64,000 nucleotides of DNA from Octopus bimaculoides (Eukaryota), in contig NC_068984.1 of NCBI RefSeq assembly GCF_001194135.2, positions 146,450,097-146,514,096 on the forward strand. The letters run 5' to 3'. A program made the position numbers and the translations under genes. Position 1 is the first letter of the stretch. Each line of letters starts with the position of its first letter. This document shows, in pieces, positions 10,428-57,643 of this stretch. Under the pieces are notes generated by a model that worked only from the letters and a program-made list of their open reading frames with translations, did not search any database and was not told the origin of the DNA.

Positions 10428-10565
<138 letters not shown>

Positions 10566-15732: not shown

Positions 15733-15861
15733 GCAATGTTAGACGGAGTATTGGACTGTCTGTGACTTCTACTTTGACACAACATTGCTATAATAAATTC
15801 CTTAATAGCAACCTGCCCCAACTCAATGTTGGCTTCAGTTACTCAATTTAAAGGGACATTG
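15733..15861 (+). ncRNA. Box H/ACA snoRNA, copy C (diverged paralogue; same 3' pocket, different 5' pocket)
   Basis: GCAATGTT/AACATTGC stem; H box ATAATA 15790-15795; 3' pocket GCAAC + TACTC; ACA 15856-15858. Confidence 0.78.
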
Positions 15862-16743: not shown

Positions 16744-16875
16744 GCAATGTAACACTGAGTATATATAAATGTTAAACCGTTTATACTCTGACTTGCCATT
16801 GCTAAATCAACTCCATATTCAGCAACACTGCTCCAACTTCATGTTGGCTTCAGTTACTTCAATTATGGGACAATT
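16744..16875 (+). ncRNA. Box H/ACA snoRNA, copy B (near-identical to copy A)
   Basis: Differs from copy A at two positions before the ACA box (one turns an A-U into a G-U pair); ACA 16870-16872. Confidence 0.85.
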
Positions 16876-17773: not shown

Positions 17774-17868
17774 GTTACAATGTGAGTCTCCGCCGACGAA
17801 AGAAGAACAAGATAGGAGTCAAACATAAAGTCACAAAAGAGGAAGCTTTGAAGTGGTTCCAACAAAAG
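17774..17868 (+). CDS. RPL11: RPL11 exon 5
   Basis: GYNVSLRRRKKNKIGVKHKVTKEEALKWFQQK; TTCAG| acceptor and AAG|GTGAAT donor. Confidence 0.96.
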
Positions 17869-18421
17869 GTGAATTATTGGTTTCTGTTGGTTTCAGTAAG
17901 AAACTGAGGAATAATCTTTTTGTTTTTGAATTGTAGGAAAGACCTTCTAATTTAATACAAGTCTCCAACTGTGGGGAAAAAAACCTTTTAAGCAAATGTT
18001 CCGATTGCTGAAACCTGCTTGGGAAACAAAACTGTTGAAAGTTTTTATTAAAGATAAAAAGATTGGATGAATTTTTACTGTTTCCGAATTTAAATAAGAT
18101 TGGCAAAAATTAATTGCCACTGGGAAAATGAGAGGGAGAAAGATTTTAAACAATTTCTAATATTTCAGAAAGTGTGTGAGCATGGGTAATCAGCATTTAA
18201 TAAGATATTTCATTTATATAGTTTTGGGTAATTTTGTAGTTGGTCTGCTTGATTGCTAATGAATTCTAACCATAGTAAAAGATTATAATGTTTGGTAGTT
18301 AATTAAATATGCTTAACATCATAAACTCATTGTTGCTAATTAATATTCCCTCTTAAATGTTCTATTCAGAGTATTTTAAATATGGCTTTAAATTCAATAT
18401 AATTTTCTTTCTTTCTTCCAG

Positions 18422-18451
18422 TTTGATGGTATCCTCCTCCCTGGCAAATAA
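18422..18451 (+). CDS. RPL11: RPL11 exon 6 (last; 180 aa total)
   Basis: FDGILLPGK-TAA after a long pyrimidine tract; the six exons sum to 543 nt. Confidence 0.95.
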   Translation, partial: FDGILLPGK

Positions 18452-27389: not shown

Positions 27390-27806
27390 TCATTTTACTC
27401 TGGAAGAGAGAGAAAGTTTGTTGATGTAGTCGGTGATAGCCTTGCGAGACCCAACAGTGTTCTGGAGATAGGCATTATACGAAGCTAAGAGATTAGCTCT
27501 GTTGGATGGATGCACTTCCTTTAAACGTTTCACTTCCTGTCTATAGAAGTCCTTTTCTCTCTGTTTCCAGTCATCGCCGACTTTCTTCTGTGAATTCGTT
27601 TTCTGTTTGCGGATGAGTTCTTTCCTGTAAATAATCAATAACTTATTTAAGACACACAACAAACAATGCTTTTTTTTTTGTTGTTCAACGCCATCGAAGG
27701 GCCATTCTAGCCATTGTAAGGGCATTGTTTTTCATAAAGCTATTTTTTTTAGTAGATTAAATTGACAAGAAGCTTCTTTTTCTAAAGCCAGTTACCTAGT
27801 TTCCAT
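27390..27806 (-). CDS. Candidate 81-aa uncharacterised protein (exons 27806-27796 and 27624-27390)
   Basis: ATG GAA ACT AG|GTAACT, a 171-nt intron, then TTTACAG|G; METRKELIRKQK...EKDFYRQEVKRLKE...NLLASYNAYLQNTVGSRKAITDYINKLSLSSRVK; phases match; in-frame stop upstream of the ATG. Confidence 0.6.
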
Positions 27807-27812
27807 GGCAAC
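27799..27812. promoter_or_regulatory. Perfect RFX X-box overlapping a start codon
   Basis: GTTTCCATGGCAAC = GTTNCCATGGNAAC consensus. Confidence 0.7.
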
Positions 27813-28773
27813 AAGTAACCGACATCACAATATTCCACCTGGTCAGTAGCCAGCCGGCTTCAAGGCCAGTAATTTTGAGGGGCGGGGGTCTTAGTCGATT
27901 ACATCGACTCCAGTACTTGACTCGTCCTTTATTTTATAGACTCTGAAGGGATGAAAAGGATTTCCCCCCCATCTCTTTATGTTCTGAGTTCAAATCCATT
28001 CCAAGCGATTTGAACACAAAACCTAAAGAGATGCCGCTGATGATTCCGCCAGTTGGTTGCTTTATGGTTTAATATTAATAACATTTTTACTCGAGGGTTA
28101 CATACATATATGGATTATTATTAATGGTAGTAACGAGTCACATAAATCATTTAGTCACGAAAAAACAGCCGACGGAAGTCACATTGGTGGAGGTCATCCT
28201 ATCGCCAAGTTTTCGTTGCTCAAATCCAAGTCAGCCTCGAACGACATGTTTGATAAATTATTAGTTTTAATTTAATTCAAAACGTTCTAATCCTGCCGTG
28301 GTCAATTTTACTTTTCATCTTTCCGGCACCAATAAAACAAAATACCAGTTAAGTAATAGTGGGTTTTTTGCCATTTACTGTACCCCACACCACACTACAC
28401 AAAAAAAAGAAAGTTTGGCCTTCTGTCTGTTTAAGAAATCTGACTAAATTTAATGTTCCATTTTTAACGAAGTGGATGAGTTTGGCACTTTTTACCAAGT
28501 AAATCAATTCCAGACTCAATTTTAGAGACACAGACCCACATATCATTCTGAATTTGCAGTCTCGCATGAAATAAAGTTTTTCTTTCTCTGGTCTTAAATA
28601 ATGGCTGTGTCTAAGTATCTACTCTCTCTCTCTCTCCCTCTCTCTCTCACTTTCTCTCTTTCTCTTTCACTTCCTTTGTGTCCCTCTCCTCTTCCGCTTT
28701 TGATTTAACAATGTATCTATGTATCTATCTACTTCTTTTGCGATGAACGCCGTCACCACTCACTGTCTCTTTC

Positions 28774-28816
<43 letters not shown>

Positions 28817-29370
28817 TTCAATCTCTCTCTCTCTCTCACTGTTTCTCTCTCTCACTCTCTTTCACTCTCTTTCTCTCTCTCTTAGGTCCACTGAAACATT
28901 TAGACAAAACGAACGCCGTCACCACTCACTGTCTCTTTCTCTCTCTTTCACTCACTCTCTTTCTCTCTCTTTCACTCACTCTCTTTCTCTCTCACCCCCT
29001 TTTCTCTCTTTCTCTCTTTCTCTCTTACTTCCTCTCTGTCCTCCTCTCTCTCGAAGTCTGACACACAACACATCTACGTACAAAAACAAAATGTTAGCGT
29101 ATTAATATTATTGATAATCCAGTCGAGGAATTTTCCGTGAATTCCTGCAAATAAAAGACGCCATGGTCATCTTGTGACTAGTTTTGGTCAAAGACCTTTT
29201 GATCAGAGGCAACCAGATTCAAATAACAACTGTATAGAATTCTGATTTGAAATCAATAAATTTAACTTGGGACGAAAAAAAAAAAAAAAAAAAGCATGCG
29301 AATTTCGTACATCTTTTTTCTCTAATTTGAAATTCTAATTTATGACCCCGCCAAAAAAANNNNNNNNNNC

Positions 29371-29770
29371 AGGCGTGGCTGTGTGGGAAGTAGCTTGCTT
29401 ACCAATCACATGGTTCCGGGTTCAGTCCCACTGCGTGGTAACTTGGGCAAGTGTCTTCTTCTATTGCCTCGGGCCGACCAAAGCCTTGTGAGTGGATTTG
29501 ATAGACGGAGACTGGAAGAAGCCCGTCGTATATATGTATATATATATATGTGTGTATGTGTGTGTGTGTATATATGTTTGTGTTTGTCCCCCCAACATCG
29601 CTTGACAACCGATGCTGGTGTGTTTACGTCCCCGTAACTTAGCGGTTCGGCAAAGAGACCGATAGAATAAGTACTAGGCTTACAAAGAATAAGTCCTGGG
29701 GTTGATTTGCTCGACTAAAGGCGGTGCTCCAGCATGGCCACAGTCAAATGACTGAAGCAAAATATAAAGA
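29371..29770 (+). mobile_element. tRNA-derived SINE with an internal microsatellite
   Basis: A/B-box head GGCGTGGCTGTGTGG...GGTTCAGTCCC; homologous copies at 54520-54895 (+) and 52790-53220 (-). Confidence 0.8.
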
Positions 29771-29853
29771 ATAAAAGACTAAAATGGTTGTCTCAAATAA
29801 CTGCAAACATCAGGGAAAAGACGCAAGTTTGAATTAAATTTAGTATGACTGAG

Positions 29854-30054
29854 TTATTTCCCTTCAATCATTCTGTCGTTTTTGTTTAAACTCTTAACAA
29901 AACTTAACTCATTTTCATATCGTTTTTCAATTCTCTTGATTGTCTTGGAAGGTATTTCCGGTAGAATTAAAGTGTCAAGCTTTAAGTCTTCTGTTGGGTC
30001 ACACAAACCAGTGGCTGTTTGGCGGCTCCGATAGCTCGGGAAAGGAGCTTGTGG
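29854..30054 (-). CDS. Giant-exon gene: candidate last coding exon
   Basis: TTTTCCAG| acceptor; only phase 0 stays open: PQAPFPSYRSRQTATGLCDPTEDLKLDTLILPEIPSK...GK*; the chained model totals 9621 nt = 3206 aa + stop. Confidence 0.6.
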   Translation of the reverse strand, partial: PQAPFPSYRSRQTATGLCDPTEDLKLDTLILPEIPSKTIKRIEKRYENELSFVKSLNKNDRMIEGK

Positions 30055-31500: not shown

Positions 31501-32628
31501 CCGACGAATACAGTAATTAGAAAAGAAGATCTCAGCTTAACCACAATACTCTGCGGACAAATACAATGAAAAGCAGAAGAGTTTGTCTTACTTGTCTCAT
31601 CATATACCGCACCAAGCTTGTATCGTAGTAGGGCTTCAAAGAAGAGAACACATACGGTTGGTACTGGACTCTAGCGAAGCGATGAGAAAACGGAAAAAGA
31701 AAATAGAAGTTTGTAAATTAAATTAACATTTCAAACACGCAGCGTAATTCAGAAGTGACTTTCGTACTTAAATGAGATATAAAACTATTTTACTGTTTCA
31801 GTTTTTTTTTTCATATTATCTTTGTTATTTTGTTATGAATACATACATACATACATACATACATACATACATACACGTACATGCACACGCACATCCATGC
31901 ATGCATGCATGCATGCATGCATGCATGCATACATACATACATACATACATACATACATACATACATGCATACATATAAAACCCCTTTGAATGACCAGCAC
32001 ATGGAATCTATGACTCTATACTATCCATTTGTAATCACAAAATATGAACTCCTATCAGAATCTACATACCATGGACAGGAAGCCTTCCTACCCATTCTAC
32101 CGACACACCGCTTTCCTTGGATAATGGAACTCCAACTGTAACATCCCACATATATCTTTATTTCTATTCTCTTATTTCCCTTTATCCTTCCTATCTCCAT
32201 TCTTTTCCAAAACAACTCCTTATAGAGAACTCTATTAATTCCCTCTACTATTTCTACTATATATAAATATATCTGTCACATACCTGCGATAAATATAAGA
32301 TATAGGATATAGATAAGATAAATAAATCTCTATAAAGAGCATGGATACATACAACATACGAAGTGAACCCATCCACACACACACAAACACAAACACAAGA
32401 AATTTCATGGACGGCCACATGAATGTGAAGAACACGTTTAACACCGACAGCAGCTGCGGCGGTGACGACGATGGCAACAGCAACAACAACAACAACTACC
32501 ACGATGGCAACAACGTGGGCGAACACACAGACACAGAGGAATACAGGGACAGCAGCAACAGAATGGGGCTGAGGGGAAGGCCACACTTCTGTTAAAAGCT
32601 ATGACACACACACAAACATACACACACA

Positions 32629-32665
<37 letters not shown>

Positions 32666-32998
32666 GGACACAAACGCCTGCGCGCATAAGGATACGCATC
32701 TAAGAAGAACAGAATGGAATAAGTGGAGCAAGAATACACATGAAAACGAAAAGTGTCGCTAAAGAGGTCACAGATGTGTGACAAAAGATTTGCAGGCAAT
32801 GGACATGAGTTAAGAATAATGAAATAAGAACAGGAATAAACGAGTGAAGAACAAGTGTATAGTGCGTGTGTTTAGTTGGCAAAAAAAAAAAAAANNNNNN
32901 NNNNNNNNNNNNNNNNNNNNNNNNNNNNNNNNNNNNNNNNNNNNNNNNNNNNNNNNNNNNNNNNNNNNNNNNNNNNNNNNNNNNNNNNNNNNNNNNNN

Positions 32999-33358: not shown

Positions 33359-33440
33359 TGTGGCGGTTTGGAAATCTTCGACGCTGTTTCTTGAAGGATT
33401 TTTTCCAGTTCTTTGAACTCTTGGAAATATCTTGGGTTGA
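33359..33440 (-). CDS. Giant-exon gene: downstream 82-nt exon
   Basis: TTCTTTTAACAG| acceptor and CA|GTAAGT donor; the phase-1 reading gives VNPRYFQEFKELEKILQETASKISKPP. Confidence 0.65.
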
Positions 33441-33863: not shown

Positions 33864-36800
33864 TCAGACACTACTGTGCTTTTTTTTTTTTTTTTCTCTA
33901 GTGTGCTCTACCATCCAATCTTGCAATGTGCTGGCGCAGTGTGGCATGCTATAAATGACAGTTTTACCTTTACCAAAAGACTTTGATTTTGATTTAGACG
34001 AAGGATTCTTGGGTTGTTTACGAAGCTTTAAGATAAACATTTCAGATTTTGTTTCTTTCGTCAAACAGGTTTTTTTAATTTTCACTTTTTTCCTCAGAAA
34101 ACATTTTCTATGGTATTCTCCAATATTATCTTCATTATCCGACGTAGACCCCGCCGAATCGTTGGACCTGACCAAAGTTTTCAGCAGTTTCTCTTTCAAC
34201 AAATTATCATTTTCCGAGTCAGTCTGTTGCTTTTTTATGCTTCTTTGTGAAATTGTTTTCATATTATTAACGAAAACATGTTCTTTTCCTTTACGAAAAA
34301 GCAGATGGTTGCTCGAATCGACTGCGTTTGTTTTCTTTTTTTTAGCAGACGACATTCCAGTAGAGGTTCTTTTCTTATTGACGACCAAATCTTTATTCAG
34401 TGAAGTTAGATATCGGTTGCGTATACAATTGCACTTGTTGTTCCTGCAATTATTTTGATTAAAAGTGTTTAGTTTGGAACCATTAAAATGTTTCGCTTTA
34501 CTGCTTTTATGCGGATGCATATGTGCCGGAGTGAAGGTATTTGTTGGCGACAGGCTGTTTAACTGAGTTGATAAAGGTCCCTTCGAAGAATCTGTACCAT
34601 GTGAATCAGTAAAGTCTTTCGAAGATGATTTGCTATCAGTAGCATTCTTGGAGTTATTTTTCGGTGATAATGGTGAGCTGGGAGTGAGTTCTTGGAATGA
34701 AGAACCTACGAGGTTTGGTAATTTATCGCTCTTGTATAACGACGGTAAACCATGATAATACACTTCAGCGTCTTTCATAGCCGTACATGAAAGGGAATTT
34801 GTTTCGTCATCAACCTTCAAACAAGTGTTTCTGTTAATACATGTTTCAATTTCTGTTGCCAATCCTTCATCGATAGGATCAACAACCGACATATTTCTTT
34901 GTCTGGCCATTTCGATTTGAGTCTCAACGTTTTGGTTCGCTGTCATAGTTTTATCATTTGGATTCGTTTTACAGCTGGGAACAACATACTTTTGGTTTAT
35001 TGATGATTTCGTCGACACTGTAGCTATTGACGGCATATTCTTCGATTTGAATTTCGCTTTACCATTTCGTGTGTGACTTTCAGGCATTTTAGAGTCGTTA
35101 TCGGAAATATTCCTTCGTTTTTTCATTTCTGATTCTGATACACTTGAACCGATTTTTGGTAAAAAGGATGAATTACTTTTCACACAATTCCTACATTTCG
35201 CATTTTTAATATGACAATCTTTGGTACTTAATTGTTTATTGCTGATCGATGTCTGAATTGTATCGATTGGCTTAGAAAAGGCGATGCTACACTTGTTTTT
35301 ATCTGATATCGCATATGTGTTTGCGATGTTATTCGACGTGTTTGAAATGGCGAGTTTCTCCATCTCCCCGTCGGTTGCCGTCTTACGGTTTGGAATATTG
35401 CTTCTCGGTTTATCCAGTTTCGTAGCGTTTTCTACATCGCTCGGATTCTTTCTAACTTGTAAATTATTTTTACCATATTTTGAATGACTAGCATCACTAC
35501 TTTGAAATACTTTGCTACGAACTTTGGTCGTCTGCCCTAGTGTTTGAGAGTTTTCATTGTTATTTGTTGTAGATCTGGGAGATTTCAGAGGTAATGTGGC
35601 CCTGTCATTCGATATATTCTTACAGGGTGCTGCAACCATTATAGGTTTTCTGTCAGTTTGTTCATAAGGTTTAGCAAAGTAATTCCTTGTTTCATTCTTA
35701 ATGTGATCTGTTGCTGCAGTCTTTTTATTTTCAGGGTTATTTTCTTGAAACGGACTACAAGACGTATATTTTGTAGATTGACTGAAACTTTTTTTACGTT
35801 CAAAAATGTTTGGTAATTTCCCACCAGAGACAGTTTTTGATTGTTGTTGATTTGGTTGTTGCCGTTGTTGTCCATTTGTTTTAGTTACACTGGTCATATA
35901 TTCCGACTGCTTTTCGTTTGTTTGCTCATCTGGTATTTCCTTTGCTTCTTCACATTTTGTTGGAACAGCTGTGTCTTTATTTAACTCCGGACTACTATTC
36001 CCTGATGTAGAATTCGAAGAGTTTATAACTATAGTTCCCAAAGGGTTTAGAATAGAACTGAAACTATAGGCGAAGCTGTTCTCTGACAGCATGGGGAATG
36101 TGTTCGTTTCAATAATTTGATCCAAAATTTCTTTATCGAAATTAAATTTAGAGCTATTCGCCTCGTTATGGGATATTTGTAATATTTCCTTCTTTTCCAC
36201 GACTTCTTTCATTGAAGTGTTTTCATGACCGGAAGTAGAAACATTTCTGTGAACTGATATAATAGTTGATTTTTTAGTATCGCAAATATTTGAGATTCCA
36301 TTACTGCTATCAGCGCCATCTGCTCGGTTTTGTACTGTATTCACCCAAATGTGCTCCACAATATCCGGTTTTTCTGTTACACATTCATCCAACGGAACAG
36401 AATCATCGGCCTGAGTGGATGTTTTTCTTGTAATTGTCTTTAAGATATTTCCAAAATCATTTTGGACATTTCCTGATGTAATTTCGCTGTTTTGTTTCTC
36501 TGGGTTCGAAACGTTAATACGAAGAGTGTTACAAGAAGCAGAATCTCCTTCGATGTTTCTGCCTGTTGCTGTTTCGTTTGTGTTATGTTTTACCTCATCT
36601 TTAGCGACAGCAAACGGCTCCCCTTTTGTATTTTCATCAACGGTAAACTGTCTTGTAATATTTGGCGGATTTACATCTGCGTTCTCTGTAGACTGGATGG
36701 TAACTATGTTTGATGGTATACCATTAACTGCATCATGCAACGCTTGCGATTTGGTGTTCGAATCACACACGTTTCGGTTTCCATTTGGAAGAGATCGATT

Positions 36801-39800
36801 GGTGTCAATCAATACAGATTCGATTGTAATTTTGGTCTTTGAATCAGAAATAACTTTTGCTTGCTTTGTTTCTGAAACTTTTTCATTTTGATTAGTATCG
36901 AACTGGCAATTCAACCCCTGTATTGAAGGATTATTGATTTCTTCAGTTTCTTCTTCATTCCCATTAGAAGTCTGCATAACAGTTGAGTTCTGAGTATTGT
37001 TGCCAGGAGATTCAGTTGGACAATTCCTTTCTGATACAACTCCAGAATTCGATGCTTCTTGCACTTTTTCTTCGCTAGAAATTTTCAGCATTTCTTCAAT
37101 GCCATTTGAATGATTCTTCTTATAAACTTTAAGTTTACCATTTACATTTTGTCCTAGTTCGATCGTATTTTGTTCTGATATTTCATAAATTTTTTCAGCC
37201 TTTTTCGCTGTCACGACGGCAACTAATCTTTCTTTTTGTTCAAAAATCTTCTCTGAAATAGTCTCAGGGAATTCTTGTAATGGTTTCCCCTCCGAAACTG
37301 TCTTAAAACAGAGGCTGTTTTGATCTTGGTCGTTGATAGACGCATTACGAGTGTCATTGTCATCGTTTTGTTCTTTAATAAAGTCAGAGATGTTCACCAA
37401 CAGCTTCTCAGTCGTATTGTTTGCCATTTTCAGTTGCGCTTGTTGTATTGTATTTTTCTGAATATAACATGTGTTATCACCGACGTTTATTGCAAGACAT
37501 GTTACATAGTCTTTTACACCAATTCTTGTTTTAGAGACATTTGTAATGTCCATTTTAACCAAATCCAAGCAATTTTCTACGGTTTTGTGGAATGGCGTAA
37601 CTTTGGAAGAGTTCCTGGCACTATCTAACATTTCGGGCGACGTACTCGTTGCTTTCGTATTTTTATACATTTCTGTACAATGGCTTCTAAACGCTTTTTC
37701 TATTGGATCGTTGTTAGTGTTAACGAAATTATAACCAATCCCTATCAAATCACTAGGTTTCGGATAGCTGATGTTTGCAACATTTTCCATGATATATCTT
37801 GCTAAATTTTCTTGTATGTACGCAATATCTTCGTTTCCTTCACGATCACGACAGTGGTGTGTGGTTGCAACATCATCCAGTGAAATGGTAATGGAATTTT
37901 GTCTAGACTTCGCTGTTTTGGTGTTTGATAATGAAAAATTAATATCTTTTGTCCTACATGCAACTTCTGTAGAAATATTCCTCGTATCACCGACTGGAAA
38001 TGTGGTGACGTCATTGTCTGCGATGGCTGAACACTTTGTGTTATTTGCAGAACCTTCCTCATATTTCATCACATACTTGTTCGATGCGATATTACTTGAT
38101 AAGGCGGCTGCATTTGTTAACGGAACTGTTGGCACATCAATGTCTGAGGCGACACATTTTCCTGCATTACCGTTCGATACGGCATTAATTGAAGAGCAAA
38201 CACGTGAAATGTTATTATTCGTCCTAATATCGTTCGATACGACGCTGCTAGAGGCGACACTTGAGTTACTATCGTCTGATTGGACGTTATTTACGAAGGT
38301 ATCACGTGATGCGACATCTCCGCTCGAGATGGTGCCGTTTGATACAGTAATACTATTTAATGAATCGCTATTTGATACAGTATTGTCAGATATATCAAAA
38401 ACTATATTTTTGTCTACATTTGATGACTCGACCGAGTTATACAGAGCAACGTCTGTCGGGTTAATCTTTAATTTTGTTGGCAGACTGTTTGGTAACTCCA
38501 CAACGCTAGTCTTTTCTTTTCCGCCATCATTACTTTCAGGTTCAAAATAACTAAACTCCTTCTCTTTTGAACTTTCATTTTGCCCTGTGTTCAAAGTAAG
38601 TTGAGATTCTTCACGATCTTTTCTCGCTGCTTCTTCTTCCAAAAGGTTGCTGGTATCTTTAACTATTATCTTACTGGTTACAGTTTGCATTGTGTTTTTC
38701 TCGGGAAATGTTTTGATTGGTTCCTCACCAATTGATTCCATGTCCCCCTTTATTTTGCTTTCTTTACAAAAAATCTCTTCTTCTCCAATACAACCATCGA
38801 CTAAAGAATACGGCATACTTTCAATAATGTACGCTAGGGGATCATAGAAAAAATTGTCGACACCAAAATTGTTCTGGTTACAAGTTATTTTGTCAACGAC
38901 CGAAGCAGCAATTAAATCATTATCTATAACAACAGCGTCTTTCAACTGTTCTGCTGATAGGTTTTGCGAACTATTTAACGAAATGACGCCGCTAGCTGAA
39001 TCGGTTTCCGTGGTACAAAAGGAAGCTTTAATCTTCTCTGGCAAATCTGAAGAGGTTAAGTTTTCAGTTAAAACCACATCATTCATTTGATTTGGTCGTA
39101 TATAACTTGTAATGCCGTCTGCTCGTTCGCTGTATATATTCACCTCTTCTTCGTCAAACTGGACTCTGATATCTCTTCTACGATGGCCACCGTCTCCATT
39201 TCCGTTCATACCGTATTTACCGCTAATAAAACCGCAAACTCTCTTCGTGATCGAACAGCGTTCCTGACCGGTTAATTTACCTTCGATTCGCAGGGAAGTA
39301 TTCGAATTCTCCTCTCGGAATCCACTTTCACCAATAGGACCAGAGGAAGGGGATAACAGTTCCTTTTGAAGGGAAATTCTATAATTTGTCATCTTCGGTA
39401 AAGACTTACTTTTGTCTGTTTCTATTAGCTTGTTGTCCATTTCTTCAATTGAGAAATATGCAAATCGTGGTATCTCGAAAGTAAATTCCTCTGAGCGTTT
39501 ATTCCTCGCAAGTCGCTCGTTCGACTCATTATTCTTGACGTTTGAACTTCGATCGTCAATAAAACCGAAAGAATTGGTGCTATTTTGTCGTTTTACCGAA
39601 GTAGCAACATTGGTTTCTTCATTTTCTTCTACACTAATTTTTGTCTGGGTTTTCTGTGCATATTTCGCAGATAAATCGCCACAGTTTTTATCTCCGTTGC
39701 CGTCGTTAGATATAGATTTATAATTTTTATCCAAATTCGAACCAGACGTACTTATGTGACCGTTGTCTCTGCTTATTGCATCATTTGAAACATCCGAGGA

Positions 39801-42800
39801 ACTTGTACGACTTGTCTCAGCATCCACTACGTCAGAGAATGCTAAACGATTAGTTCCACTTCCAATCATATCGGTTAATGCAAACAAAACCCCCGCTTTC
39901 TTCAACGTGTAACTTTCATCAAAGACTTTTGTAGCTGAGGTATCTTTTTTCGATACGGTTTCTTTTGTCATTGGTTTTAAAGCATCGTCTGCATTTTCTA
40001 GTTGAAGTACCTTACTGCCGTCTTTTGCTGTTGCATCACTGGTTTCGAAATTTGAAGACACAGTTCCATCTTTGAAAACTTCCTCTTTCTCTGTTTGTAC
40101 TAACGACCCGTTATTATCGGTCAAATTCTTCAACTTGTCTTCTGGCGAAATACTAACGATGTATCCTGGTTTGCATTCTGCTCGATTTTCTAGTTTACAA
40201 GCATATGGGTTAATCGTTCCTTCTTTTATTTCATTATTATTTTCCAGGCTGGCCTTCGAATTATTCGAAAATTGGCATTTTGAAGAATTTGATGTTTCTA
40301 TCAGCTTACAACCCAAGAGAGAAATAATATCCCTCAGTTTGGTCTTTTCAAATGCGAAAATGGGAACATTGATTTTTTTAGTCTTGCATGGATCTCCGCT
40401 AGAATCCGTTTCGTTTCTCGCGTCTTTGTCAGCGAAGCATGCAGTTTCGTCAGATTCTGGCAAGTCAGAACGAATGCTTTTGTCATTAGTTGTAAGACCA
40501 TCATTGAGAATATCCTGGGACGTTGTAATCATTTCATATTTACTACTCAAATTTTCAGGTAGTCTTTTGGTTAGATTTTGTTCAGAATTTCTGTTAATGA
40601 GAATGTTAATTGTCCCAGGGGTAGAACTACTGGGTAACGAACCTGTATCGTTTTCTTTTGTAATGTCGAGAATATTTTCCTTTTTGCTTATCAATGGACA
40701 TTTTAAAGAACTATTTGTTTGAATTATTTCTGATCCTAACGGAAGCATTTCTTGATCGAATCCAGCAAAGGATTCTTTTCTTATAGCAAAGCTATCGATT
40801 TTCGAAACTGGCCCTGTAGCACATCCAGTTGTCTTTTGGTTAATATTCGTGTTGGAATTATTACCGTTCAAAAGCTCAATGTTAACACCACAATCATATT
40901 TAGGTTCGCCGTTTTCTAACGAAAGTTTGTTACTGTTTGAGATGATATCGCACGATTTAGAAAAACATTTTGGAAGCAACAACAAATTGTTTCCTTCCAC
41001 GTTAAGAGAAATCTTTTCTTTAATCTCAAGAGTGTTATCGGCATCACTTGCCTGTAACGTCACAGCTGGAACCTTTGAACTCTTTTGGATGCTGTTTGTT
41101 TGATAGGGATTTCGAACTAAGTCTACACTCGGACTACAAGGCAACATTTTTGGTATAAATAACTCATCACCGATTGGGAACTTAACTGAAATAGCCGTTT
41201 TATCAAACGATTCAGGCGTTTGTTGCTGGTGTTGTTCTTGTGATACTTGTTCAACACAAGGAAAACTATCCTTTATTTTCGCAGTATCTTTGCTTGACAT
41301 TATTTCCATGGAAGACTCACTGTTTCCATTCGAGTATTTTATAAAATTTGGATGTTCTGAACTGACCACGTGATATTTCGGATGTGAATTTTTCTGGCAT
41401 ATTACAGGAACTCTATTTTGCTCAGACAGACACTTGGTTCTGTCATCGAGCTGCAAGTCGGGATTGGCTTTTATAAAAACATAAGTAACACATTTCTTTG
41501 TATTTTCACCGGATAATTTACCCCCTTCGGTGTTTGTAAGCTCTTCTTCGTCCATGCATGTTTTACTGTCATTTTCAGGATCGTTAATGCAATTAATTTC
41601 TTTTGGGAGCTTTTCTATGTATTTTGTTTCGTTTCGTTTTGTTTTTGATGTGCTCTTCATTGTAATTGGAGAGGACATTGCTAAACAGTCATTAGAATTG
41701 TTTTGTGATGGATTCCCCACAATAACTGGCTTACCATCACCATTTAGTATTGTAGCTTCATTGAAAAGGATATCGCTTTCTCTTTGTTGTACATTTTCGC
41801 TGTTTTTATGTGAATTTTCATCATTATTCATTATCTCCGCTGACGCGTCATCTTCATTTTTCTCTTTTGAAACATCTGCGATATTAGTTTGAACTTGTTC
41901 GCTGTTTTCTTTTAATGTTTCGCTAGTTACAACATCGCTGTTATATTTTGGTGAATTTTGGTTTGTGTTTTTTCCTTGATCATCGATCGATCCACGAGGA
42001 ATTCCAGCTACTATATCGTTTTGTTTTCTAACAAAACTTTTCCCAGAACGTTTGTTTGCACCAGAAGCATTATTTTCCAGTTTTAAAATAACTTTGTTGC
42101 TCCACCGAGACAACAACATTTTTAATCCTACACCTAATTTGTTAATCGACCTCGACTTATCCAAATTGCTTTCCGAACAACCGTTCGTTAGTTCTGGAAT
42201 CACTTCTTTCCTCACAACCTCGGAATCTTTATCGATTTTTTTCGCAGGCACCTCTTTATTAGCAACGCTATTTTCCTCACTCAAATTCTCAGCATCTTCG
42301 TTTATGCTTTCGCTTGATTTCGTGTCGTTTTTCACTGATAACGTCTCTTTATAAAGTGTTTGTTCCAGTTTCACAGATCGAACTTTGTAGATATCGAACT
42401 TGCCTTGTGGATACCCACCTATCTCACACAATTTCTCCGATTCTGCACTGAAATGATTGAGGATCGAAGTCGGATTCGGACCAATAACATTTAGTCTTTC
42501 TTGTGATGTACTCGGCATTATAACACCACAGTACTGCAGTCTGTCACTGGATTCGCTAATATTTGAATCAATATTCACATCGAAGTTCATCTGCATCAGA
42601 TGTGACTGAAGTTGTTGGTTCTGTAATAAGCCATTAGTGCCAGCATCGATCTCTTTCGTATCCTCGATTTCCAAGTAGGAATTGATGTTCTTCAGAGTTA
42701 TCATCGAATTGGCATCGGCTTTGAAGACACTTGGACTAGCAATCACTCTTGCTCCTGATTTCAAATCGCCGTTAGCAAAAGAACTGTTTCTTTTTCTGCA

Positions 42801-43165
42801 TGCCGCTTCCAGGTGTGATTGCAGCAACTGCAATCTTGTCACTTGATATGAAGGTGTAAGGACCGGGTTCTTTAGCAATTCAGCCAGGTCAGTATGTTTG
42901 AAATTGGCCATTGATAAAGCTGTGGACTTGGATTCCTTCAACTCATCGTTGGCATTATTTTCCACCTTGAGACTGTAATCGACATTAGTCTTTGGAGTTG
43001 CTTCGTTTCGTTCAGGTGTTACAACAACAAGAGGAGTCGCAACAGGTACTGCTGCAGCAGAAGCATTATGAGTGTTATCAACAACCGTTGCAGTGTTGCC
43101 GTTGATTGCCTTCTGGTCTGACCCCTGACCGCTGCCGGACGTGTTGCTAACGACTTCTTTGTTTG
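33864..43165 (-). CDS. Giant ~9.2-9.3-kb coding exon; S/N/K/E/T-rich, probably largely disordered uncharacterised protein
   Basis: Stop-free frame of ~3100 codons in AT-rich DNA. The frame extends upstream of the ORF-track GTG to an acceptor AAAAG|CA at 43165, with an in-frame TGA just 5' of it. Phase-1 donors G|GTAAAG (33974) and AAG|GTAAAA (33968) lie near the end; otherwise the stop is at 33864. Confidence 0.88.
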
Positions 43166-45289
43166 CTTTTATTGGTAAGGGTCATTAAAAAGAAAGGAAA
43201 AAGTAATTTAAACGAGAAATTAAGAACAACATCAAAACTAAATTTTCACAACATTTTACAATTGCATCAACAACAATAACAACAACTCTAATTCTTTCTA
43301 ATTTTGGCACAAGGCCATCAAATTTGAGGGGAGGGACGGTCGATTGCAACGACCCAATGCTCGACAGATACTTATTTCATCGAACCCGAAAGGATGAAAG
43401 GCAAAGTCGACCTCGGTAGAAATTGAACTGAGAACGTAAAGAGCTGGAAGAAATGCCGCTAAGAATTATGTCTGGTGCTCTACCGATTCTGCCAGCTCAT
43501 CGCCTTAACAACTCTACAAAGAACGCGCTCATTTTTATATCATTTCCCTGTTTACGCCGGGGGAGGGGGGGGGAGAAACTGACAACTTTAAATGGTCAAT
43601 GCTTCTAAATGACCAACTACTTTACTTTAGGGAAAATTCACAATGCCATGGATAGAAATCTGAGGCAAAATCAACGTGATATACAGTAGAATCCTTCTGA
43701 CAGGCTTCATTACAGTTTCCGTCTACCCAATTTTACTCACAAGATATGGGCCGATTCAAGGTTATAGAAAAATGCATTTACTCAAGATATTACGCAGTGG
43801 GATCGAACCGTCGACCTCGGGTTTGCGAAGTGGACTTCTTAACCATTCGACCATACTGCACCTGCAAAGTTTAACTGGCGCTCGCAAGTGAGTCTGTCCC
43901 AATAGCTTGTACCTCGTTTTCGTTGATTATTTTGTATGCTTGTGTTGTATCTCGGTTCTCTCAGTCTTGATCCAGCGGAACATAGGAACGGCATAACAAA
44001 GAAAGGGAGAGTAAAGCTACACCATCCCTCATCACTAAGGTGGTACTTCTTTACAGCTGAGCAGAGTAAAGCAATGTGAAATGAAGTGTTTTGCCCAAGA
44101 ACACAACACATCACCCCATCCAGGTATCGAAACCACACTCTTACGATCACGAGCAAAACCCTAGCCACTAAGCCACACGGCGCTACATGAAGCATATTAT
44201 TAGTCCGTTATATGCAGAACTGGATTAGAATGGCCAAAGTCGACTTTGATAGCATTTGAACTGAGAACTGCGTTATTCGTCGGGAGGTAATATCTCTTAC
44301 GGATGAGCTGCGTTTAAAACACACAATATACGTAGGAAACATCATGTATTTTACATTAAATGTTAAACATAGATGATCATTTTAATCTATTATTGCTTCT
44401 GTTGCATATAACGAATTTTTATTCAGCTAGGCGGTTCTTTGCAACATCAGTGATTGTTCATTAACTGTTTTCTTATATCGGTGGCGAGAGATTTCGTTTT
44501 ACTATGCGATTGGCTGTGGGTACACACCACTAACAATGTCCAACTGGGTACAAATGCTGCATTCAGTATTCCCATCAGCCACTGCTTGGACGATTTTGGT
44601 CTTCTGATATATATATTGTATTTTTGAACATTGTACGTCCATAAGAGGTATCACCTCAGGACGAATACTAAAATAAATTTGCTTTTCGCTGTGTTCACAT
44701 TGTGTATGACACACAGATGGCCATATTATTAGTTTATAAAACCAGTCTTTCTCAATGGAGGGAGAGCCAAAAAAATATGGATCCGACTGGAGAGAAGTAG
44801 AAAAGGCAGCCCAGAATTGAGAAAAGTCGTCGATGGCCTCTGCTTCAAAGGGTACGAAATTCTTACAGAAAAAAAGCCACTAAATTGCCAGGATCGCAAC
44901 CTTCAAATGTTAGCGGCCACAGGCCTGAGTAAGAAAAGAATTTGATAAACTATAAAATTTCGGTGAGCTGAGGCCATTTTGAAAAATCGATTCTGTGTTG
45001 AAGTTATTTCACGCCATTGACCATGTTTATAGTGTTGAGGAAAGTTTTGGAAAGAAAGCAAAAGAAAGTCCCTTGGACATTATTGTCTCGAGTCTTCGGA
45101 CTCATAAGACCAGTTACCCGGTTTCCATGGAATCTCTTGGAAAAATAGCACAGAGCAAACACCGAGGGATTTGGGAAATGGATAGTTTTGTGTTTTTCTT
45201 TCCTTTACTGTTGGTGATGTAAGTCATCGTCTGCAAATTGACAGAATGCTTAGTACATCGTATAGAATGCTTTGCAAGGTTTGTCAAAC

Positions 45290-45735
45290 AAGGCCAGCTT
45301 GAACAGAAGGTCCTGTTCTGTGTTTGACGGAATTTCGAGGGGGGTGTTGCACTTTGAGTTTGTCCCAGATGGTCATGCTAAGAACGCTAATCTTTATGCC
45401 CAACGACTGTAGCGAGTACACGGCAGTTTGAATGCCTACATGACAATGCCTCAGCACACACTGACAATGTGACCAAGCACAAACTCGGGGAACATGAGAG
45501 GTTGGAAGTTCTGCCTCACTCTGCCTACAGTCCGGACCTTGGACCACCAGATTAACACCCTTTCCGAACCATAGCTTATTTCCTGCCCGGGCGGAAGTTC
45601 AGCAATGTGGATGAGGTTGAAAACGGGTCCAGGGAATTTTTTTCCACTAAACCAACCAAATGGCATAAGCGTGGATTTGAGCTCCTGACAAAACAATGGC
45701 AACAGACAATAGAATATGAAGGGATGCATTTTCAT
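45290..45735 (+). pseudogene. Mariner transposase C-terminal remnant
   Basis: HDNASAHT, LPHSAYSPDLGPPD*H, W..TIEYEGMHF; contains stops and frameshifts. Confidence 0.85.
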
Positions 45736-46055
45736 ATATCATTTGTTTGATCTTTTAAGGCTTGAAATAGGAAAAAGCGTTTGACTCAACCTGCTGCTTC
45801 TGTTCATTCAATTCTTGCAAACTCGTACAAACGTTTCTTCTGCTTCGTCTCACGAAACCCATCGCATTTGAGGTCGTTATAAGACTCAGTTTATTTTTTC
45901 CGAAAAAAACGTCTCAGAAATTACCCCGAGTTCTATATGCAAAGGTAGAGCAACATTAAAAGCTTTGATGCATAAAACTTCTTTTACCTAGATATGCGTT
46001 TCTTGAGCTCGGAGTGCATTTAATATGCCAGTACATCTTTTATGTCATCAAGTAC

Positions 46056-46056
46056 G

Positions 46057-46147
<91 letters not shown>
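46056..46147. repeat. (CA)n microsatellite, representative of many (CA/TA/AAT/CAT/CT/TCAA) tracts in the window
   Basis: Direct reading; these tracts explain most of the short ORFs in the track. Confidence 0.95.
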
Positions 46148-46148
<1 letters not shown>

Positions 46149-48181
46149 TCAACGCTGAAAAGAAAAATCAAACAGCGTTTCAACTCTGTGAGTATATGTG
46201 TGTTTAATTGCATATGTTCCCAATAAACGAATTTTATTTACATGTTGTTGATTGGCCATAGATCAACCTTACATGAGCAAACGTGATCAAAGGTATGTAA
46301 ACCGTGACCATTTGGCCCTTTTAAGTGTATCTAGGAATTCGTTATCTAATGCGTCGTTTGCTTATATAAGACGGTGTGATTTGAGGGACTACTACTTAAT
46401 TTGCTCAGTGCACACAATGGGAATAACGCTAAGTAAAGCTTTAACAACCCCAATAGCACAAAACCTCTTTATGGCTGGGTCATTAGATCCAGCAAATCGA
46501 GAGTTAAATGTCTGATGAATTACCACTGCGTGTATCTGGTTCGATCTCCTATCGAGGTATGAACATATGAATTTCATTTCCGCTGCCAGCGACATGCAAT
46601 AAATATATAAATAAGGAAAAGAAAAGAAAAAGACAAATAAAAACAAAGAAATGAAAATTGCGCCGCCATCTTTTGCTCATTTGTTCTCTTTTTTTTTCAA
46701 ATAAGATGAAAAGAAAACAATATGGCCGAGGATTAACATGAATAAAAGGTTTAGGAAAAAATATCCGATGAATTAGATTGCTTCAAGGAAAACGTTAAGC
46801 AGATTAACTGTTGAGTTGTCCGAGAATGGACTTGTTGCAACAGATAAAGGAGAATTTTAGCAAAACAATGAAGTTTTGCTAAAATTATCCCTCTGTACAA
46901 AAGAAAAAGCATTAAAAAATAATTTTAAAAAATAATATATATGTTTTTTTGTGTTAATATTTAATGCCGAAGACGAAAGCGAAACCGGGAAGAGTATCAG
47001 ATCCAATTTTAGTTTACGTTCTGTCGAAGCAAGAATAGTAGAGATCGAAAACTTAATGTTTCTGTAACTAACTGATAATGATGCATTTTGTAATCCATTG
47101 GGACGTTGGAATATTGCAGAATACAATGGGTTACTCTTATACAAACAAATTTCTTTAAACGAATAAATTGAAAACAGTTTTTTGGGAAGAAAAACTCGCG
47201 TAACGAGCTGAAATTTGATCAACGAACCACGAGAAAACTCCGTGCGCGTAAAAGTAACTAGGAGCTCATTCACTTAGGGAGCTGAATAATAAACCAGGAG
47301 CAGACTGCGCAGACGTATGACTCACTGGGAACCTTTTCACTTAGAGAGCTGAAATTTGATCAACGAACCACCATTAAACTACGCACGCGTACAAGAGAGA
47401 ATATACGAATGGTACGTTAAATGAACAAATTCTATAACAAACAGTTTTTCTGAAGAAAATTATATTCGACAAACAAACTGACATTTGAGCAACTCTGCAC
47501 GTATATATGTGGCTGAGAGAATATGTACAAATGGTTTGTTAATGTCTGAGTATACAGATCATGTAACTTGCAAATTTTTATATTTTATGTAGAAAATATT
47601 TCTCATTATTTATTCTAAGAACATAACCATGGATCGTTAGTACCACAGGCATTCATAAACGCTTATATATTTATAAAAAAATGTCTTCATTATCACAACT
47701 GAGTATCAGAGTTTCACGTAACCGTTCAGGTTACGTGAAACTCTCAGCAACAGTTTGTGAAGATTTTTCCAGCCTTAATAAAATAGTATACATCTGTATA
47801 CTAATAAAAGTGAAGTTCAATCTTGCTTGCTTGCAATGTTACACAGCCAAACTGGCACATCATGGGAAAAGATATCGACAGTTTGTATCTGACACTTCAT
47901 TCTATTGTATTCATAGTATCATGTACGTCTTCCTTATAAAGTGTGACGTAAAATTAGTAGTTACTGACATCAAAGGCCTGATGAAAAACCACCTTAGTTG
48001 ATTCTCATTAATTTCTCTCCTGCCAACTTTTCCCTGAAGAAAGACTATGTCCGAAACGTTGTATTTTCCACCCTCACATCAGCAAGTTTACCGTATTCTT
48101 TTTTTGAAATCAATTTTACTAAATAATACAAGACTCGCCGCTGACGAATGCCAACACCAGTCTTTTTGGAGTCTGTTTGAT

Positions 48182-48226
<45 letters not shown>

Positions 48227-48500
48227 NNNNNNNNNNNNNNNNNNNNNNNNNNNNNNNNNNNNNNNNNNNNNNNNNNNNNNNNNNNNNNNNNNNNNNNNNN
48301 NNNNNNNNNNNNNNNNNNNNNNNNNNNNNNNNNNNNNNNNNNNNNNNNNNNNNNNNNNNNNNNNNNNNNNNNNNNNNNNNNNNNNNNNNNNNNNNNNNNN
48401 NNNNNNNNNNNNNNNNNCACACACACAGTGTCCCCAGTATGGCTGCAGCCCAATAACTGGAACGAATAAAAGAAGGCAAAAGGTAATGGAATGATCTTAC

Positions 48501-48576
48501 CAAAACTGGAACTGGACACGAGTTTAGACTGATGTTTTCCATCTTCATTGGAAACTGGTTTGGAAGAAGATTCCAT
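48501..48576 (-). CDS. Giant-exon gene: upstream coding exon (MESSSKPVSNEDGKHQSKLVSSSSF)
   Basis: Strong TTTACAG| acceptor and TTG|GTAAGA donor; its phase-1 end matches the giant exon acceptor; may contain the start ATG. Confidence 0.6.
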
Positions 48577-56334: not shown

Positions 56335-57643
56335 ACACGTCAGACAGATCGCTAGATAGATACATCGACAGACATACAACAAACAGAAACACAAAAGATG
56401 GATAGAAGGATAGATAGATAAACAGACACTGGCGCGGACGGCCAAGTTTGTCCTTCGGATATTCTACACGAAAACGTCCGACAGTATCATGGAGTTTCAC
56501 AAACGTCATTGAATGCTGGAGGTCATTTTAGTGACATATGTAACATCCCAACACACACACACANNNNNNNNNNNNNNNNNNNNNNNNNNNNNNNNNNNNN
56601 NNNNNNNNNNNNNNNNNNNNNNNNNNNNNNNNNNNNNNNNNNNNNNNNNNNNNNNNNNNNNNNNNNNNNNNNNNNNNNNNNNNNNNNNNNNNNNNNNNNN
56701 NNNNNNNNNNNNNNNNNNNNNNNNNNNNNNNNNNNNNNNNNNNNNNNNNNNNNNNNNNNNNNNNNNNNNNNNNNNNNNNNNNNNNNNNNNNNNNNNNNNN
56801 NNNNNNNNNNNNNNNNNNNNNNNNNNNNNNNNNNNNNNNNNNNNNNNNNNNNNNNNNNNNNNNNNNNNNNNNNNNNNNNNNNNNNNNNNNNNNNNNNNNN
56901 NNNNNNNNNNNNNNNNNNNNNNNNNNNNNNNNNNNNNNNNNNNNNNNNNNNNNNNNNNNNNNNNNNNNNNNNNNNNNNNNNNNNNNNNNNNNNNNNNNNN
57001 NNNNNNNNNNNNNNNNNNNNNNNNNNNNNNNNNNNNNNNNNNNNNNNNNNNNNNNNNNNNNNNNNNNNNNNNNNNNNNNNNNNNNNNNNNNNNNNNNNNN
57101 NNNNNNNNNNNNNNNNNNNNNNNNNNNNNNNNNNNNNNNNNNNNNNNNNNNNNNNNNNNNNNNNNNNNNNNNNNNNNNNNNNNNNNNNNNNNNNNNNNAT
57201 ATATATATGTATATGTATATACATACATATGTATATACATTTATATGTATTCATATACGGAGAGAAAGAGAGAGAGGGGTAGAGAGAGAGGTGGGTGGGA
57301 GGAAGAGAGAGATTAGAGTGAAAGAGAGAAGCAAGACAGCTCGGCTGACGTAAGAGAGTGTGGATGAGTCAATCGAGTGAGACGGAATGAAATGTGAAGC
57401 CCGAAGGAAATCTGGTCGTAAGAACAGAAGAACACCAAATGGGAGTGGAGCATTCCAGAGCGAGGGCTCATAGCCACGTGCTGTGGAGACAGCACACGCC
57501 CCATCACACCACACCTCACACACACTTACAACGTCGTCGTCGTCGTTTTTGGCATCATCATCAACCATCATCACCACCACCACCGTCATCATCATCATCA
57601 TCATCATCCCAAACCACCGCCTCCACCACCACCACCATCACAG

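What the first reader, a model, noticed from the sequence alone, without database searches (positions are those of the whole stretch)
33968..43165. A ~9.2-kb single exon with symmetric phase (potential giant cassette exon)
Seen: ~3100 codons without a stop, S/N/K/E/T-rich, with no domain I can recognise. Using acceptor 43165 and donor 33968 the exon is 9198 nt (3066 codons, phase 1-1). It chains in frame with small exons at 48576-48501, 33440-33359, 30456-30393 and 30054-29854. Skipping it would keep the frame and shrink the product from ~3206 aa to ~140 aa. Knowledge: giant alternative exons occur in ankyrins and spectraplakins. Inference: a large disordered scaffold with a size switch; reading through the donor gives an alternative stop at 33864.
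Basis: partly seen in the sequence, partly recalled or inferred. Interest (0 to 1): 0.7.

Follow-up and report, generated by a model that had tools for sequence, protein, structure and literature searches.

The report
Giant 9.2-kb octopus coding exon
The 9.2-kb exon is real: it is the already annotated main exon of an uncharacterised Octopus bimaculoides gene and adds about 3,066 residues of likely disordered protein in front of an ancient small animal domain, but nothing I could test shows that it is ever skipped.

Summary
Joined to exon 1 (48576-48501) and four downstream exons, it translates to 3,271 aa. That product is identical to RefSeq XP_014791026.2, uncharacterised LOC106884259 of Octopus bimaculoides.

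The real chain is 33440-33359, 31670-31592, 30054-29909 and 27624-27390.

The exon is under purifying selection against O. sinensis (dN/dS 0.27, only in-frame indels). It is non-repetitive and has no detectable domain or homologue outside Octopus.

The last about 180 aa belong to an ancient, unnamed metazoan family (sponges, cnidarians, sea urchins, molluscs) whose members are usually 230-320 aa. The exon sits in an ancestral phase-1 intron. In other molluscs the same intron holds 1-1 exons of 84 to 3,120 nt. The symmetric phase is therefore inherited and is not evidence of a switch.

Skipping would give an ancestral-size 205-aa protein. However, all seven RefSeq protein models retrieved from the two species contain the exon. 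In O. sinensis the exon-1 ATG is ATA and translation starts inside the giant exon.

Verdict: a real, ordinary-in-kind and already annotated giant exon. The cassette idea is plausible but unsupported.

The parts
48501..48576 (-). Exon 1 of the coding sequence: ATG directly after an acceptor (tttacag|ATG), 25 codons plus 1 nt, donor TTG|GTAAGA, phase 1 out.
   Evidence: Sequence. It is part of the model that equals XP_014791026.2. Both splice sites are conserved in O. sinensis, but the ATG is ATA there.
43166..48500 (-). Phase-1 intron upstream of the giant exon. It contains an assembly gap at 48227-48417.
33968..43165 (-). Giant exon: 9,198 nt, 3,066 codons, phase 1-1. Its acceptor is of a form I judge weak (aataaaAG|C). 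It encodes a polar, non-repetitive, probably disordered region.
33968..33973 (-). The 6 nt (Gly-Lys) between the tandem donors TTG|GTAAAG (exon end 33974) and AAG|GTAAAA (exon end 33968). Both forms appear in RefSeq models.
   Evidence: The older O. bimaculoides isoforms X1 and X2 differ by GK. O. sinensis X1 and X2 differ by GN at the same place.
33864..33967 (-). Read-through tail. If the donor is not used, the frame continues 34 codons to a TGA at 33866-33864, just after an A16 run at 33880-33895.
33359..33440 (-). Exon B, 82 nt, phase 1 to 2. This is the first exon of the conserved family domain (VNPRYFQEFKELEKIL...).
31592..31670 (-). Exon C, 79 nt, phase 2 to 0 (QPYVFSSLKPYYDTSLVRYMMRQ). 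It is the same length in all five other molluscs examined. It is skipped in O. sinensis isoforms X3 and X4, which shifts the frame.
29909..30054 (-). Exon D, 146 nt, phase 0 to 2 (TATGLCDP motif), donor GA|GTTAAG.
27390..27624 (-). Last coding exon E, 235 nt including the stop (DFYRQE...AYLQNTVGSRKA...).

Best explanation
The exon is the main, by-default-included coding exon of the Octopus bimaculoides gene LOC106884259. This gene is the octopus orthologue of an ancient, unnamed metazoan gene whose usual product is a protein of 230-320 aa.

Shown:
- The ancestral gene has a short first coding exon, a phase-1 intron, and then exons for a conserved domain of about 220 aa (about 180 aa in octopus).
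- In molluscs this phase-1 intron has repeatedly acquired or expanded phase 1-1 exons that encode unconserved polar sequence.
- The octopus exon, at 9.2 kb, is the largest of those examined.

Inferred:
- The exon gives the protein an N-terminal intrinsically disordered arm of about 3,066 residues (spacer, tether or motif-bearing scaffold).
- The conserved, largely helical C-terminal domain makes the ancestral contact with a still unknown partner.
- The arm is functional, because it is kept open and evolves under purifying selection.
- The symmetric phase is a consequence of where the exon sits.
- Annotated splicing variation is confined to a 6-nt tandem donor and, in O. sinensis, skipping of the 79-nt exon C. 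That skip uncouples the arm from the domain.
For: - Identity: the six-exon model translates exactly to XP_014791026.2, 3,271 aa.
- Orthologue: O. sinensis has a 92%-identical protein in a syntenic locus. All its splice sites are conserved.
- Selection on the giant exon: dN 0.033, dS 0.122, dN/dS 0.27, below 0.6 in every 300-codon block. There are nine in-frame indels and no frameshift over 9.2 kb.
- Chance: P is about 1e-75.
- Family: homology to complete short proteins of 255 and 322 aa, each with an in-frame stop in its 5' UTR, starts at the first residue of exon B. A profile search found 184 members. Those named include sponges, cnidarians, sea urchins and molluscs.
- Intron positions and phases are shared with Nematostella: phase 1, phase 2 in the same codon column, phase 0, phase 2.
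- Occupancy of the phase-1 intron:
  - empty in Nematostella and Solemya;
  - a 168-nt 1-1 exon in Bulinus;
  - an 84-nt 1-1 exon in Gigantopelta;
  - a 2,880-nt 1-1 exon in Haliotis;
  - 252 + 1,956 + 3,120-nt 1-1 exons in Batillaria.
- Synteny: RPL11 lies next to the gene in Nematostella, Bulinus and the window.
- Character of the exon: no repeats, polar composition, no Pfam or PDB match.
- Inclusion: all seven RefSeq protein models retrieved contain the exon.
Against: - No transcript data were available, so 'included by default' rests on automated RefSeq models.
- The acceptor is of a form I judge weak (AAG preceded by a purine-rich stretch, conserved in both species). This would fit regulated inclusion.
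- The function of the conserved domain is unknown. There is no Pfam family, no PDB relative by sequence or fold, and the AlphaFold model has mean pLDDT 62.
- Disorder is inferred from composition only.
- No similarity links the octopus exon to the large exons of Haliotis or Batillaria. Common origin versus independent growth is undecided.
Confidence: 0.75

Rival explanations
1. The exon is a regulated cassette. Depending on tissue or stage, it is either included (3,271 aa) or skipped. Skipping would join 48501 to 33440 and produce a 205-aa protein of the ancestral type.
For: - Phase 1-1 keeps the frame on skipping.
- The skip product aligns end to end with the normal short family members.
- The closest relative found (P0007, 49% identical in the domain against 38% or less for other molluscs) is a complete 255-aa transcript without any giant region.
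- A small 1-1 exon in the same intron is an annotated cassette in Gigantopelta, X1 656 aa versus X2 628 aa.
- The giant exon has what I judge a weak AAG acceptor, whereas exon B has a strong one.
Against: - None of the seven RefSeq protein models retrieved from two Octopus species skips it.
- In O. sinensis the exon-1 ATG is ATA and the annotated start codon lies inside the giant exon. The short open reading frame is therefore not conserved between the two species.
- The symmetric phase is fully explained by the ancestral intron phase.
Confidence: 0.17
2. The long reading frame is a separate, intronless gene nested in the first intron of the small ancestral gene. Under this reading, gene predictors fused the two because the frames happen to be compatible.
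For: - The exon has no homology to the rest of the family or to anything outside Octopus.
- O. sinensis is annotated with a start codon inside it.
- Reading through the donor gives a stop after 34 codons, next to an A-rich stretch.
Against: - The frame opens 16 nt upstream of a conserved acceptor and stays open and coding-like for 90 codons before the first Met shared by both species (pN/pS about 0.38).
- Both donors and the acceptor are conserved.
- The same architecture, large 1-1 exons in the same intron, is annotated independently in Haliotis and Batillaria.
- Two different in-frame donor usages are modelled in both species.
Confidence: 0.04
3. The frame is a non-functional or artefactual open reading frame, for example a recent insertion, a mobile-element remnant or an assembly artefact, with no protein product.
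For: No domain, no homologue outside Octopus, biased composition.
Against: - P of such a frame by chance is about 1e-75.
- It is present and collinear in a second species with dN/dS 0.27 and only in-frame indels.
- There are no repeats and no mobile-element domains.
- There is no assembly gap inside the exon.
Confidence: 0.01

Closest known systems
RefSeq LOC106884259 (XP_014791026.2, Octopus bimaculoides) and LOC115211134 (XP_036358208-211, Octopus sinensis)
   Same: The window's exon model is 100% identical to XP_014791026.2. The O. sinensis protein is 92% identical and has the same exon structure.
   Different: Nothing differs for O. bimaculoides: this is that gene. O. sinensis differs in its start codon (inside the giant exon; exon-1 ATG is ATA) and has annotated isoforms that skip the 79-nt exon C. 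Neither gene has a name, a function or a paper in the searched library.
Unnamed metazoan family of 230-320-aa proteins (e.g. Nematostella LOC116611607, Lytechinus LOC121424567, Corticium LOC134195799, Nucella KAL8599461.1, Solemya KAL5014239.1)
   Same: They share the C-terminal domain (motifs PY.F.SL.PYY.T, TA.GL.DP, DFYR..L, AYLQNTPGSR). They share intron positions and phases and the RPL11 neighbourhood.
   Different: The octopus protein carries an insertion of 3,066 aa in front of the domain. It lacks the exon that encodes GSTRLPKFP...DVP.LR (138 nt, phase 2-2 in Nematostella; 111-138 nt in the four molluscs that have it).
Large phase 1-1 exons of the same gene in gastropods (Haliotis asinina XP_067667859.1, 2,880 nt; Batillaria attramentaria KAK7502929.1, 1,956 and 3,120 nt)
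   Same: They occupy the same intron, have the same phase, and encode unconserved polar sequence in front of the same domain.
   Different: They are three to five times shorter. There is no detectable sequence similarity to the octopus exon. Several gastropod and bivalve members (Haliotis, Gigantopelta, Batillaria, Pinctada) have an RPRTT-like motif shortly before the domain, which octopus does not clearly share.
Giant neuron-specific exons of vertebrate ankyrin-B and ankyrin-G, and of Drosophila giant ankyrins
   Same: Each is a single multi-kilobase exon encoding mostly unstructured, extended polypeptide added to a conserved protein. Such exons arose independently in different lineages (PMC7401806).
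   Different: The ankyrin giant exons are described as neurospecific, giving distinct giant isoforms, with known partners such as microtubules. Here no skip isoform, tissue specificity or partner is known, and there is no sequence relationship. This is an analogy of architecture only.

Membership tests
Alternatively spliced giant cassette exon (ankyrin-type size switch) | Internal exon of several kilobases flanked by introns on both sides | tested here: met
   9,198 nt between the acceptor at 43165 and the donor at 33968, with exons on both sides. The model equals RefSeq.
Alternatively spliced giant cassette exon (ankyrin-type size switch) | Length divisible by three with the same phase at both ends, so that skipping keeps the frame | tested here: met
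   Phase 1-1. The skip product is an intact 205-aa frame. The phase is inherited from an ancestral phase-1 intron.
Alternatively spliced giant cassette exon (ankyrin-type size switch) | Both inclusion and skipping isoforms are observed | not testable with these tools
   No RNA data were available. All seven RefSeq protein models retrieved include the exon.
Alternatively spliced giant cassette exon (ankyrin-type size switch) | The short isoform's reading frame is conserved in related species | tested here: not met
   In O. sinensis the exon-1 start codon is ATA. The annotated start (MNGG) lies inside the giant exon, where the window has AING.
Unnamed metazoan family (Nematostella LOC116611607-like) | Significant sequence similarity over the whole C-terminal domain | tested here: met
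   P0007 E=7e-54 and P0008 E=3e-21 against the octopus C-terminus. Octopus proteins score E about 1e-95 against the domain profile, which was itself built partly from the octopus C-termini, so that score is partly circular. A profile search found 184 members.
Unnamed metazoan family (Nematostella LOC116611607-like) | Shared intron positions and phases | tested here: met
   The octopus B/C (phase 2, same column), C/D (phase 0) and D/E (phase 2) introns match Nematostella introns 2, 3 and 7. The 79-nt exon is identical in length in five other molluscs.
Unnamed metazoan family (Nematostella LOC116611607-like) | Central segment GSTRLPKFP...DVP.LR | tested here: not met
   It is absent from both octopus proteins. 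No remnant was found in the D-E intron by tblastn. The Batillaria model also lacks it. I read this as lineage-specific loss of one symmetric exon, not as non-membership.
Unnamed metazoan family (Nematostella LOC116611607-like) | Conserved neighbourhood with RPL11 | tested here: met
   A Ribosomal_L5 gene lies next to the gene in Nematostella and Bulinus. RPL11 exons lie at window 9563-18451.
Any Pfam or PDB-represented domain family | Match above the curated threshold | tested here: not met
   The giant exon has 0 Pfam families. Its best PDB hit is E=0.05. The domain gives only sub-threshold single hits: CEP15-like E=0.03 in 1 of 25 members, and an RFXANK ankyrin repeat at E=0.02. Foldseek found none.

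The most novel reading that the evidence does not exclude
The giant exon may be a regulated switch. Under this reading octopus tissues would choose between the ancestral 205-aa protein and a 3,271-aa form. The phase-1 intron of this ancient gene would then be a general molluscan site where disordered cassette exons are born, grow to kilobases and are used alternatively. That would make the family a natural series for studying how giant exons originate and become spliced.
Probability: 0.15. Interest if true: 0.6.

Novelty: new member of a known kind. Interest (0 to 1): 0.3.

Why it matters
A 9.2-kb internal coding exon is, to my knowledge, among the larger ones known in animals. This one can be placed in a graded comparative series: the same ancestral phase-1 intron is empty in a cnidarian and a protobranch bivalve, and holds 84-nt to 9.2-kb exons in other molluscs.

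This offers a concrete case of how long disordered regions are added to an old, small protein, and of why such exons end up with symmetric phase.

It also flags an ancient animal protein family that is found from sponges to molluscs, lies next to RPL11, and has no Pfam model, solved structure or known function.

For genome annotation the practical points are:
- the start-codon difference between the two Octopus species;
- the tandem donor;
- the lost 138-nt exon.

None of this overturns current understanding.

Tried and rejected
- Pfam on the giant exon, on the whole O. sinensis protein, on the C-terminal domain and on 35 family members gave nothing above threshold.
- CEP15-like (E=0.03) was hit by only 1 of 25 members. 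I rejected it as chance.
- The PDB sequence hit to the RFXANK ankyrin repeat (E=0.02) is a single-repeat-like stretch. I rejected it as chance.
- The PDB search with the giant exon gave only protocadherin at E=0.05. Rejected.
- The AlphaFold2 model of the short relative P0007 with 16 sequences was poor: pLDDT 62, pTM 0.31, with only the C-terminal helices confident. Foldseek against the PDB found nothing.
- Tandem-repeat and self-BLAST searches of the exon found no repeats.
- BLASTP of the exon against all N-terminal extensions of other family members found nothing.
- A tblastn search for the missing GSTRLP...DVPxLR exon in the window found nothing.
- A scan for hidden long frames in the phase-1 introns of Bulinus and Solemya found none. 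Their short proteins are therefore genuinely short.
- Rfam over the whole window gave no match.
- Literature searches for both LOC numbers and for the SRA runs gave no papers.
- The look-up of the Nucella locus was not on record.
- An RVxF-like motif (RDIRVQFDEEE) is present, but about one such match is expected by chance in 3,000 residues (my estimate). I did not pursue it.

Full report
**Observation**

On the minus strand the window has a stop-free frame of 3,105 codons (43181-33864). The next longest frame on either strand is 260 codons. With the stop frequency measured in the rest of the window (0.054 per codon), the chance of such a frame is about 1e-75.

The frame opens directly after two stops (TAATGA). 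A single AG follows 16 nt later and gives an exon start at 43165. At the other end there are two donors 6 nt apart:
- TTG|GTAAAG, exon end 33974;
- AAG|GTAAAA, exon end 33968.

The encoded sequence has these properties:
- It is rich in S, N, K, T and E.
- Hydrophobic plus aromatic residues make up 19-34% per 150-residue block.
- It has no internal repeat.
- It has no Pfam domain.
- It has no PDB relative.

**Identity**

The only database relative of the long frame is Octopus sinensis LOC115211134 (92% identity; isoforms X1-X4 of 3,232, 3,230, 3,103 and 3,101 aa). Mapping these proteins onto the window gave the true downstream exons:

| Exon | Coordinates | Length |
|---|---|---|
| B | 33440-33359 | 82 nt |
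| C | 31670-31592 | 79 nt |
| D | 30054-29909 | 146 nt |
| E | 27624-27390 | 235 nt, includes stop |

This is residue-for-residue identical to XP_014791026.2, 'uncharacterized protein LOC106884259 [Octopus bimaculoides]'.
- The window is therefore O. bimaculoides, and the giant exon is already in the RefSeq annotation.
- No paper in the searched library mentions either locus.

**Is it functional coding sequence?**

I fetched the O. sinensis locus (L001). It is collinear with the window.

| Region | dS | dN | dN/dS |
|---|---|---|---|
| Giant exon | 0.122 | 0.033 | 0.27 |
| Conserved C-terminal exons B-E | 0.245 | 0.041 | 0.17 |

- Every 300-codon block of the giant exon has dN/dS between 0.14 and 0.58.
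- The two species differ by nine indels inside the exon, all of whole codons.
- All acceptors and donors of the six exons are conserved, including the tandem donor.
- The 90 codons between the acceptor and the first methionine shared by both species also look coding, with pN/pS about 0.38.

The exon is therefore a real, constrained coding exon that is entered by splicing.

**What the gene is**

The last about 180 residues (exons B-E) are homologous to two complete short proteins assembled from RNA-seq runs:
- P0007, 255 aa, E=7e-54;
- P0008, 322 aa, E=3e-21.

Each has an in-frame stop in its 5' UTR. Homology begins exactly at the first residue of exon B.

A profile search of 1.84 billion representative proteins found 184 members. 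The named ones are all 'uncharacterized' or carry what look like spurious automatic names:
- sponges (Corticium, Oscarella);
- cnidarians (Nematostella, Oculina, Acropora, Exaiptasia, Actinia);
- sea urchins (Lytechinus);
- molluscs (Nucella 260 aa, Solemya 301, Bulinus 304, Pinctada 536, Gigantopelta 628/656, Haliotis 1,258, Batillaria 2,025).

The family has no Pfam model and no solved relative. An AlphaFold2 model of P0007 is confident only for C-terminal helices (residues about 179-254), and Foldseek found nothing.

The conserved domain always sits at the C-terminus. The N-terminal extension ranges from about 10 to about 3,050 residues.

RPL11 is the neighbouring gene in Nematostella, in Bulinus and in the window. 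This supports orthology.

**Why the phase is symmetric**

I derived exact exon maps for six other species.
- The octopus B/C, C/D and D/E introns coincide in position and phase with Nematostella introns 2, 3 and 7.
- The 79-nt exon C has the same length in all five other molluscs examined.
- Every species has a phase-1 intron just upstream of the first domain exon.

What that phase-1 intron contains differs by species:

| Species | Content of the phase-1 intron |
|---|---|
| Nematostella | nothing |
| Solemya | nothing |
| Bulinus | one 168-nt 1-1 exon |
| Gigantopelta | one 84-nt 1-1 exon, present in isoform X1 and absent from X2 |
| Haliotis | one 2,880-nt 1-1 exon |
| Batillaria | 252-, 1,956- and 3,120-nt 1-1 exons |
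| Octopus | the 9,198-nt 1-1 exon |

- No hidden long frame exists in the Bulinus or Solemya introns.
- The large exons show no sequence similarity to one another.
- The symmetric phase is therefore what any exon born or grown in a phase-1 intron must have. It permits skipping but is not evidence of it.

**The cassette hypothesis**

In favour:
- Skipping yields an intact 205-aa protein that aligns end to end with normal family members.
- The closest relative, P0007, is probably another cephalopod. This is inferred only from its domain identity: 49% against 38% or less for gastropods and bivalves. It is expressed as a short form.
- A small exon in the same intron is an annotated cassette in Gigantopelta.
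- The giant exon's acceptor is of a form I judge weak (AAG after a purine-rich stretch) in both species.

Against:
- All seven RefSeq protein models retrieved contain the exon.
- The annotated alternatives are the 6-nt tandem donor and skipping of exon C, which shifts the frame and removes the conserved domain (O. sinensis X3 and X4).
- In O. sinensis the exon-1 ATG is ATA, although the splice sites of that exon are kept. The annotated start (MNGG) is inside the giant exon, where O. bimaculoides has AING.
- In at least one of the two species, therefore, the short frame cannot start where it would need to.

Without RNA data the question stays open. I put the cassette model at about 0.17.

**Other rivals**

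- A separate nested gene is unlikely. The frame opens at a conserved acceptor and looks coding upstream of any shared ATG. The same exon architecture is also annotated independently in two gastropods.
- A non-functional frame is excluded by the comparative data.

**Mechanism**

Shown:
- The exon is real, constrained and annotated as spliced between exon 1 and the domain exons.
- It lies in an ancestral phase-1 intron that has gained 1-1 exons in several molluscan lineages.

Inferred:
- The exon encodes a long, disordered N-terminal arm attached to an old helical domain that carries the ancestral interaction.
- It is included by default.
- Its role is that of a spacer, tether or carrier of short motifs.

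The closest functional analogy is the giant ankyrin exons, which are independently evolved, largely unstructured and extend a conserved protein (PMC7401806). This is an analogy only.

**Verdict**

The flanking exon chain is half wrong. The size-switch interpretation is plausible but unsupported, and one comparative result speaks against it. The feature is an annotated, uncharacterised giant exon: a new example of a known kind, with a modestly interesting evolutionary context.

Noticed in passing
window 48574-48576 versus L001 4341-4343; window about 43100 versus L001 10001: The two Octopus species differ reciprocally in their start codons. O. bimaculoides has ATG in exon 1 and ATC (AING) in the giant exon. 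O. sinensis has ATA in exon 1 and ATG (MNGG) in the giant exon. An outgroup is needed to polarise the change.
   Followed up: partly
window 27625-29908 (intron D-E): Octopus lacks the family exon that encodes GSTRLPKFP...DVP.LR (138 nt, phase 2-2 in Nematostella; 111-138 nt in other molluscs). No remnant was found. The Batillaria model lacks it too. The closest relative, P0007, still has a degenerate version.
   Followed up: yes
window 9563-18451 (+ strand): Exons of a ribosomal protein L11 (Ribosomal_L5 domain) gene lie here, 84-87% identical at protein level to the Bulinus gene. RPL11 is also the neighbour of this family's gene in Nematostella and Bulinus, so this is old microsynteny.
   Followed up: partly
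window about 5336-5458 (- strand): An exon similar (56% over 41 aa) to the Bulinus gene carrying NYD-SP28 domains (DRC1-like axonemal protein). In Bulinus that gene lies on the other side of RPL11. The three-gene neighbourhood seems conserved.
   Followed up: no
window 33968-33974: Tandem donors 6 nt apart (GTAAAG|GTAAAA). Both are used in RefSeq models and they are conserved as GTAATG|GTAATC in O. sinensis, giving isoforms that differ by two residues.
   Followed up: yes
window 31592-31670; L001 24517-24595: The 79-nt exon C has exactly the same length in five other molluscs. It is skipped in O. sinensis isoforms X3 and X4. The resulting frameshift ends the protein 24 residues later, giving a giant protein without the conserved domain.
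   Followed up: partly
window 33880-33895: A run of 16 A (on the transcript strand) lies just before the read-through stop at 33864. It could cause internal oligo-dT priming and mimic a 3' end in cDNA data.
   Followed up: no
window 48227-48417, 32895-32998, 56564-57198 and 11 further runs: There are fourteen runs of N (assembly gaps) in the window. One lies in the intron 84 nt downstream of exon 1. None lies inside the giant exon.
   Followed up: yes
cluster of P0001: Two unrelated-looking 56-57-aa ENA proteins (P0005, P0006: MPEFEIKFEANRLHEIG...) are listed in the same 90% cluster as the octopus protein. This is probably a clustering artefact.
   Followed up: no
giant exon versus introns: Synonymous divergence in the giant exon (dS 0.12) is at the low end of the intron divergence seen for this locus (about 0.10-0.25). 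The intron alignments are noisy. Possible constraint on synonymous sites (splicing enhancers, RNA editing) was not tested.
   Followed up: no
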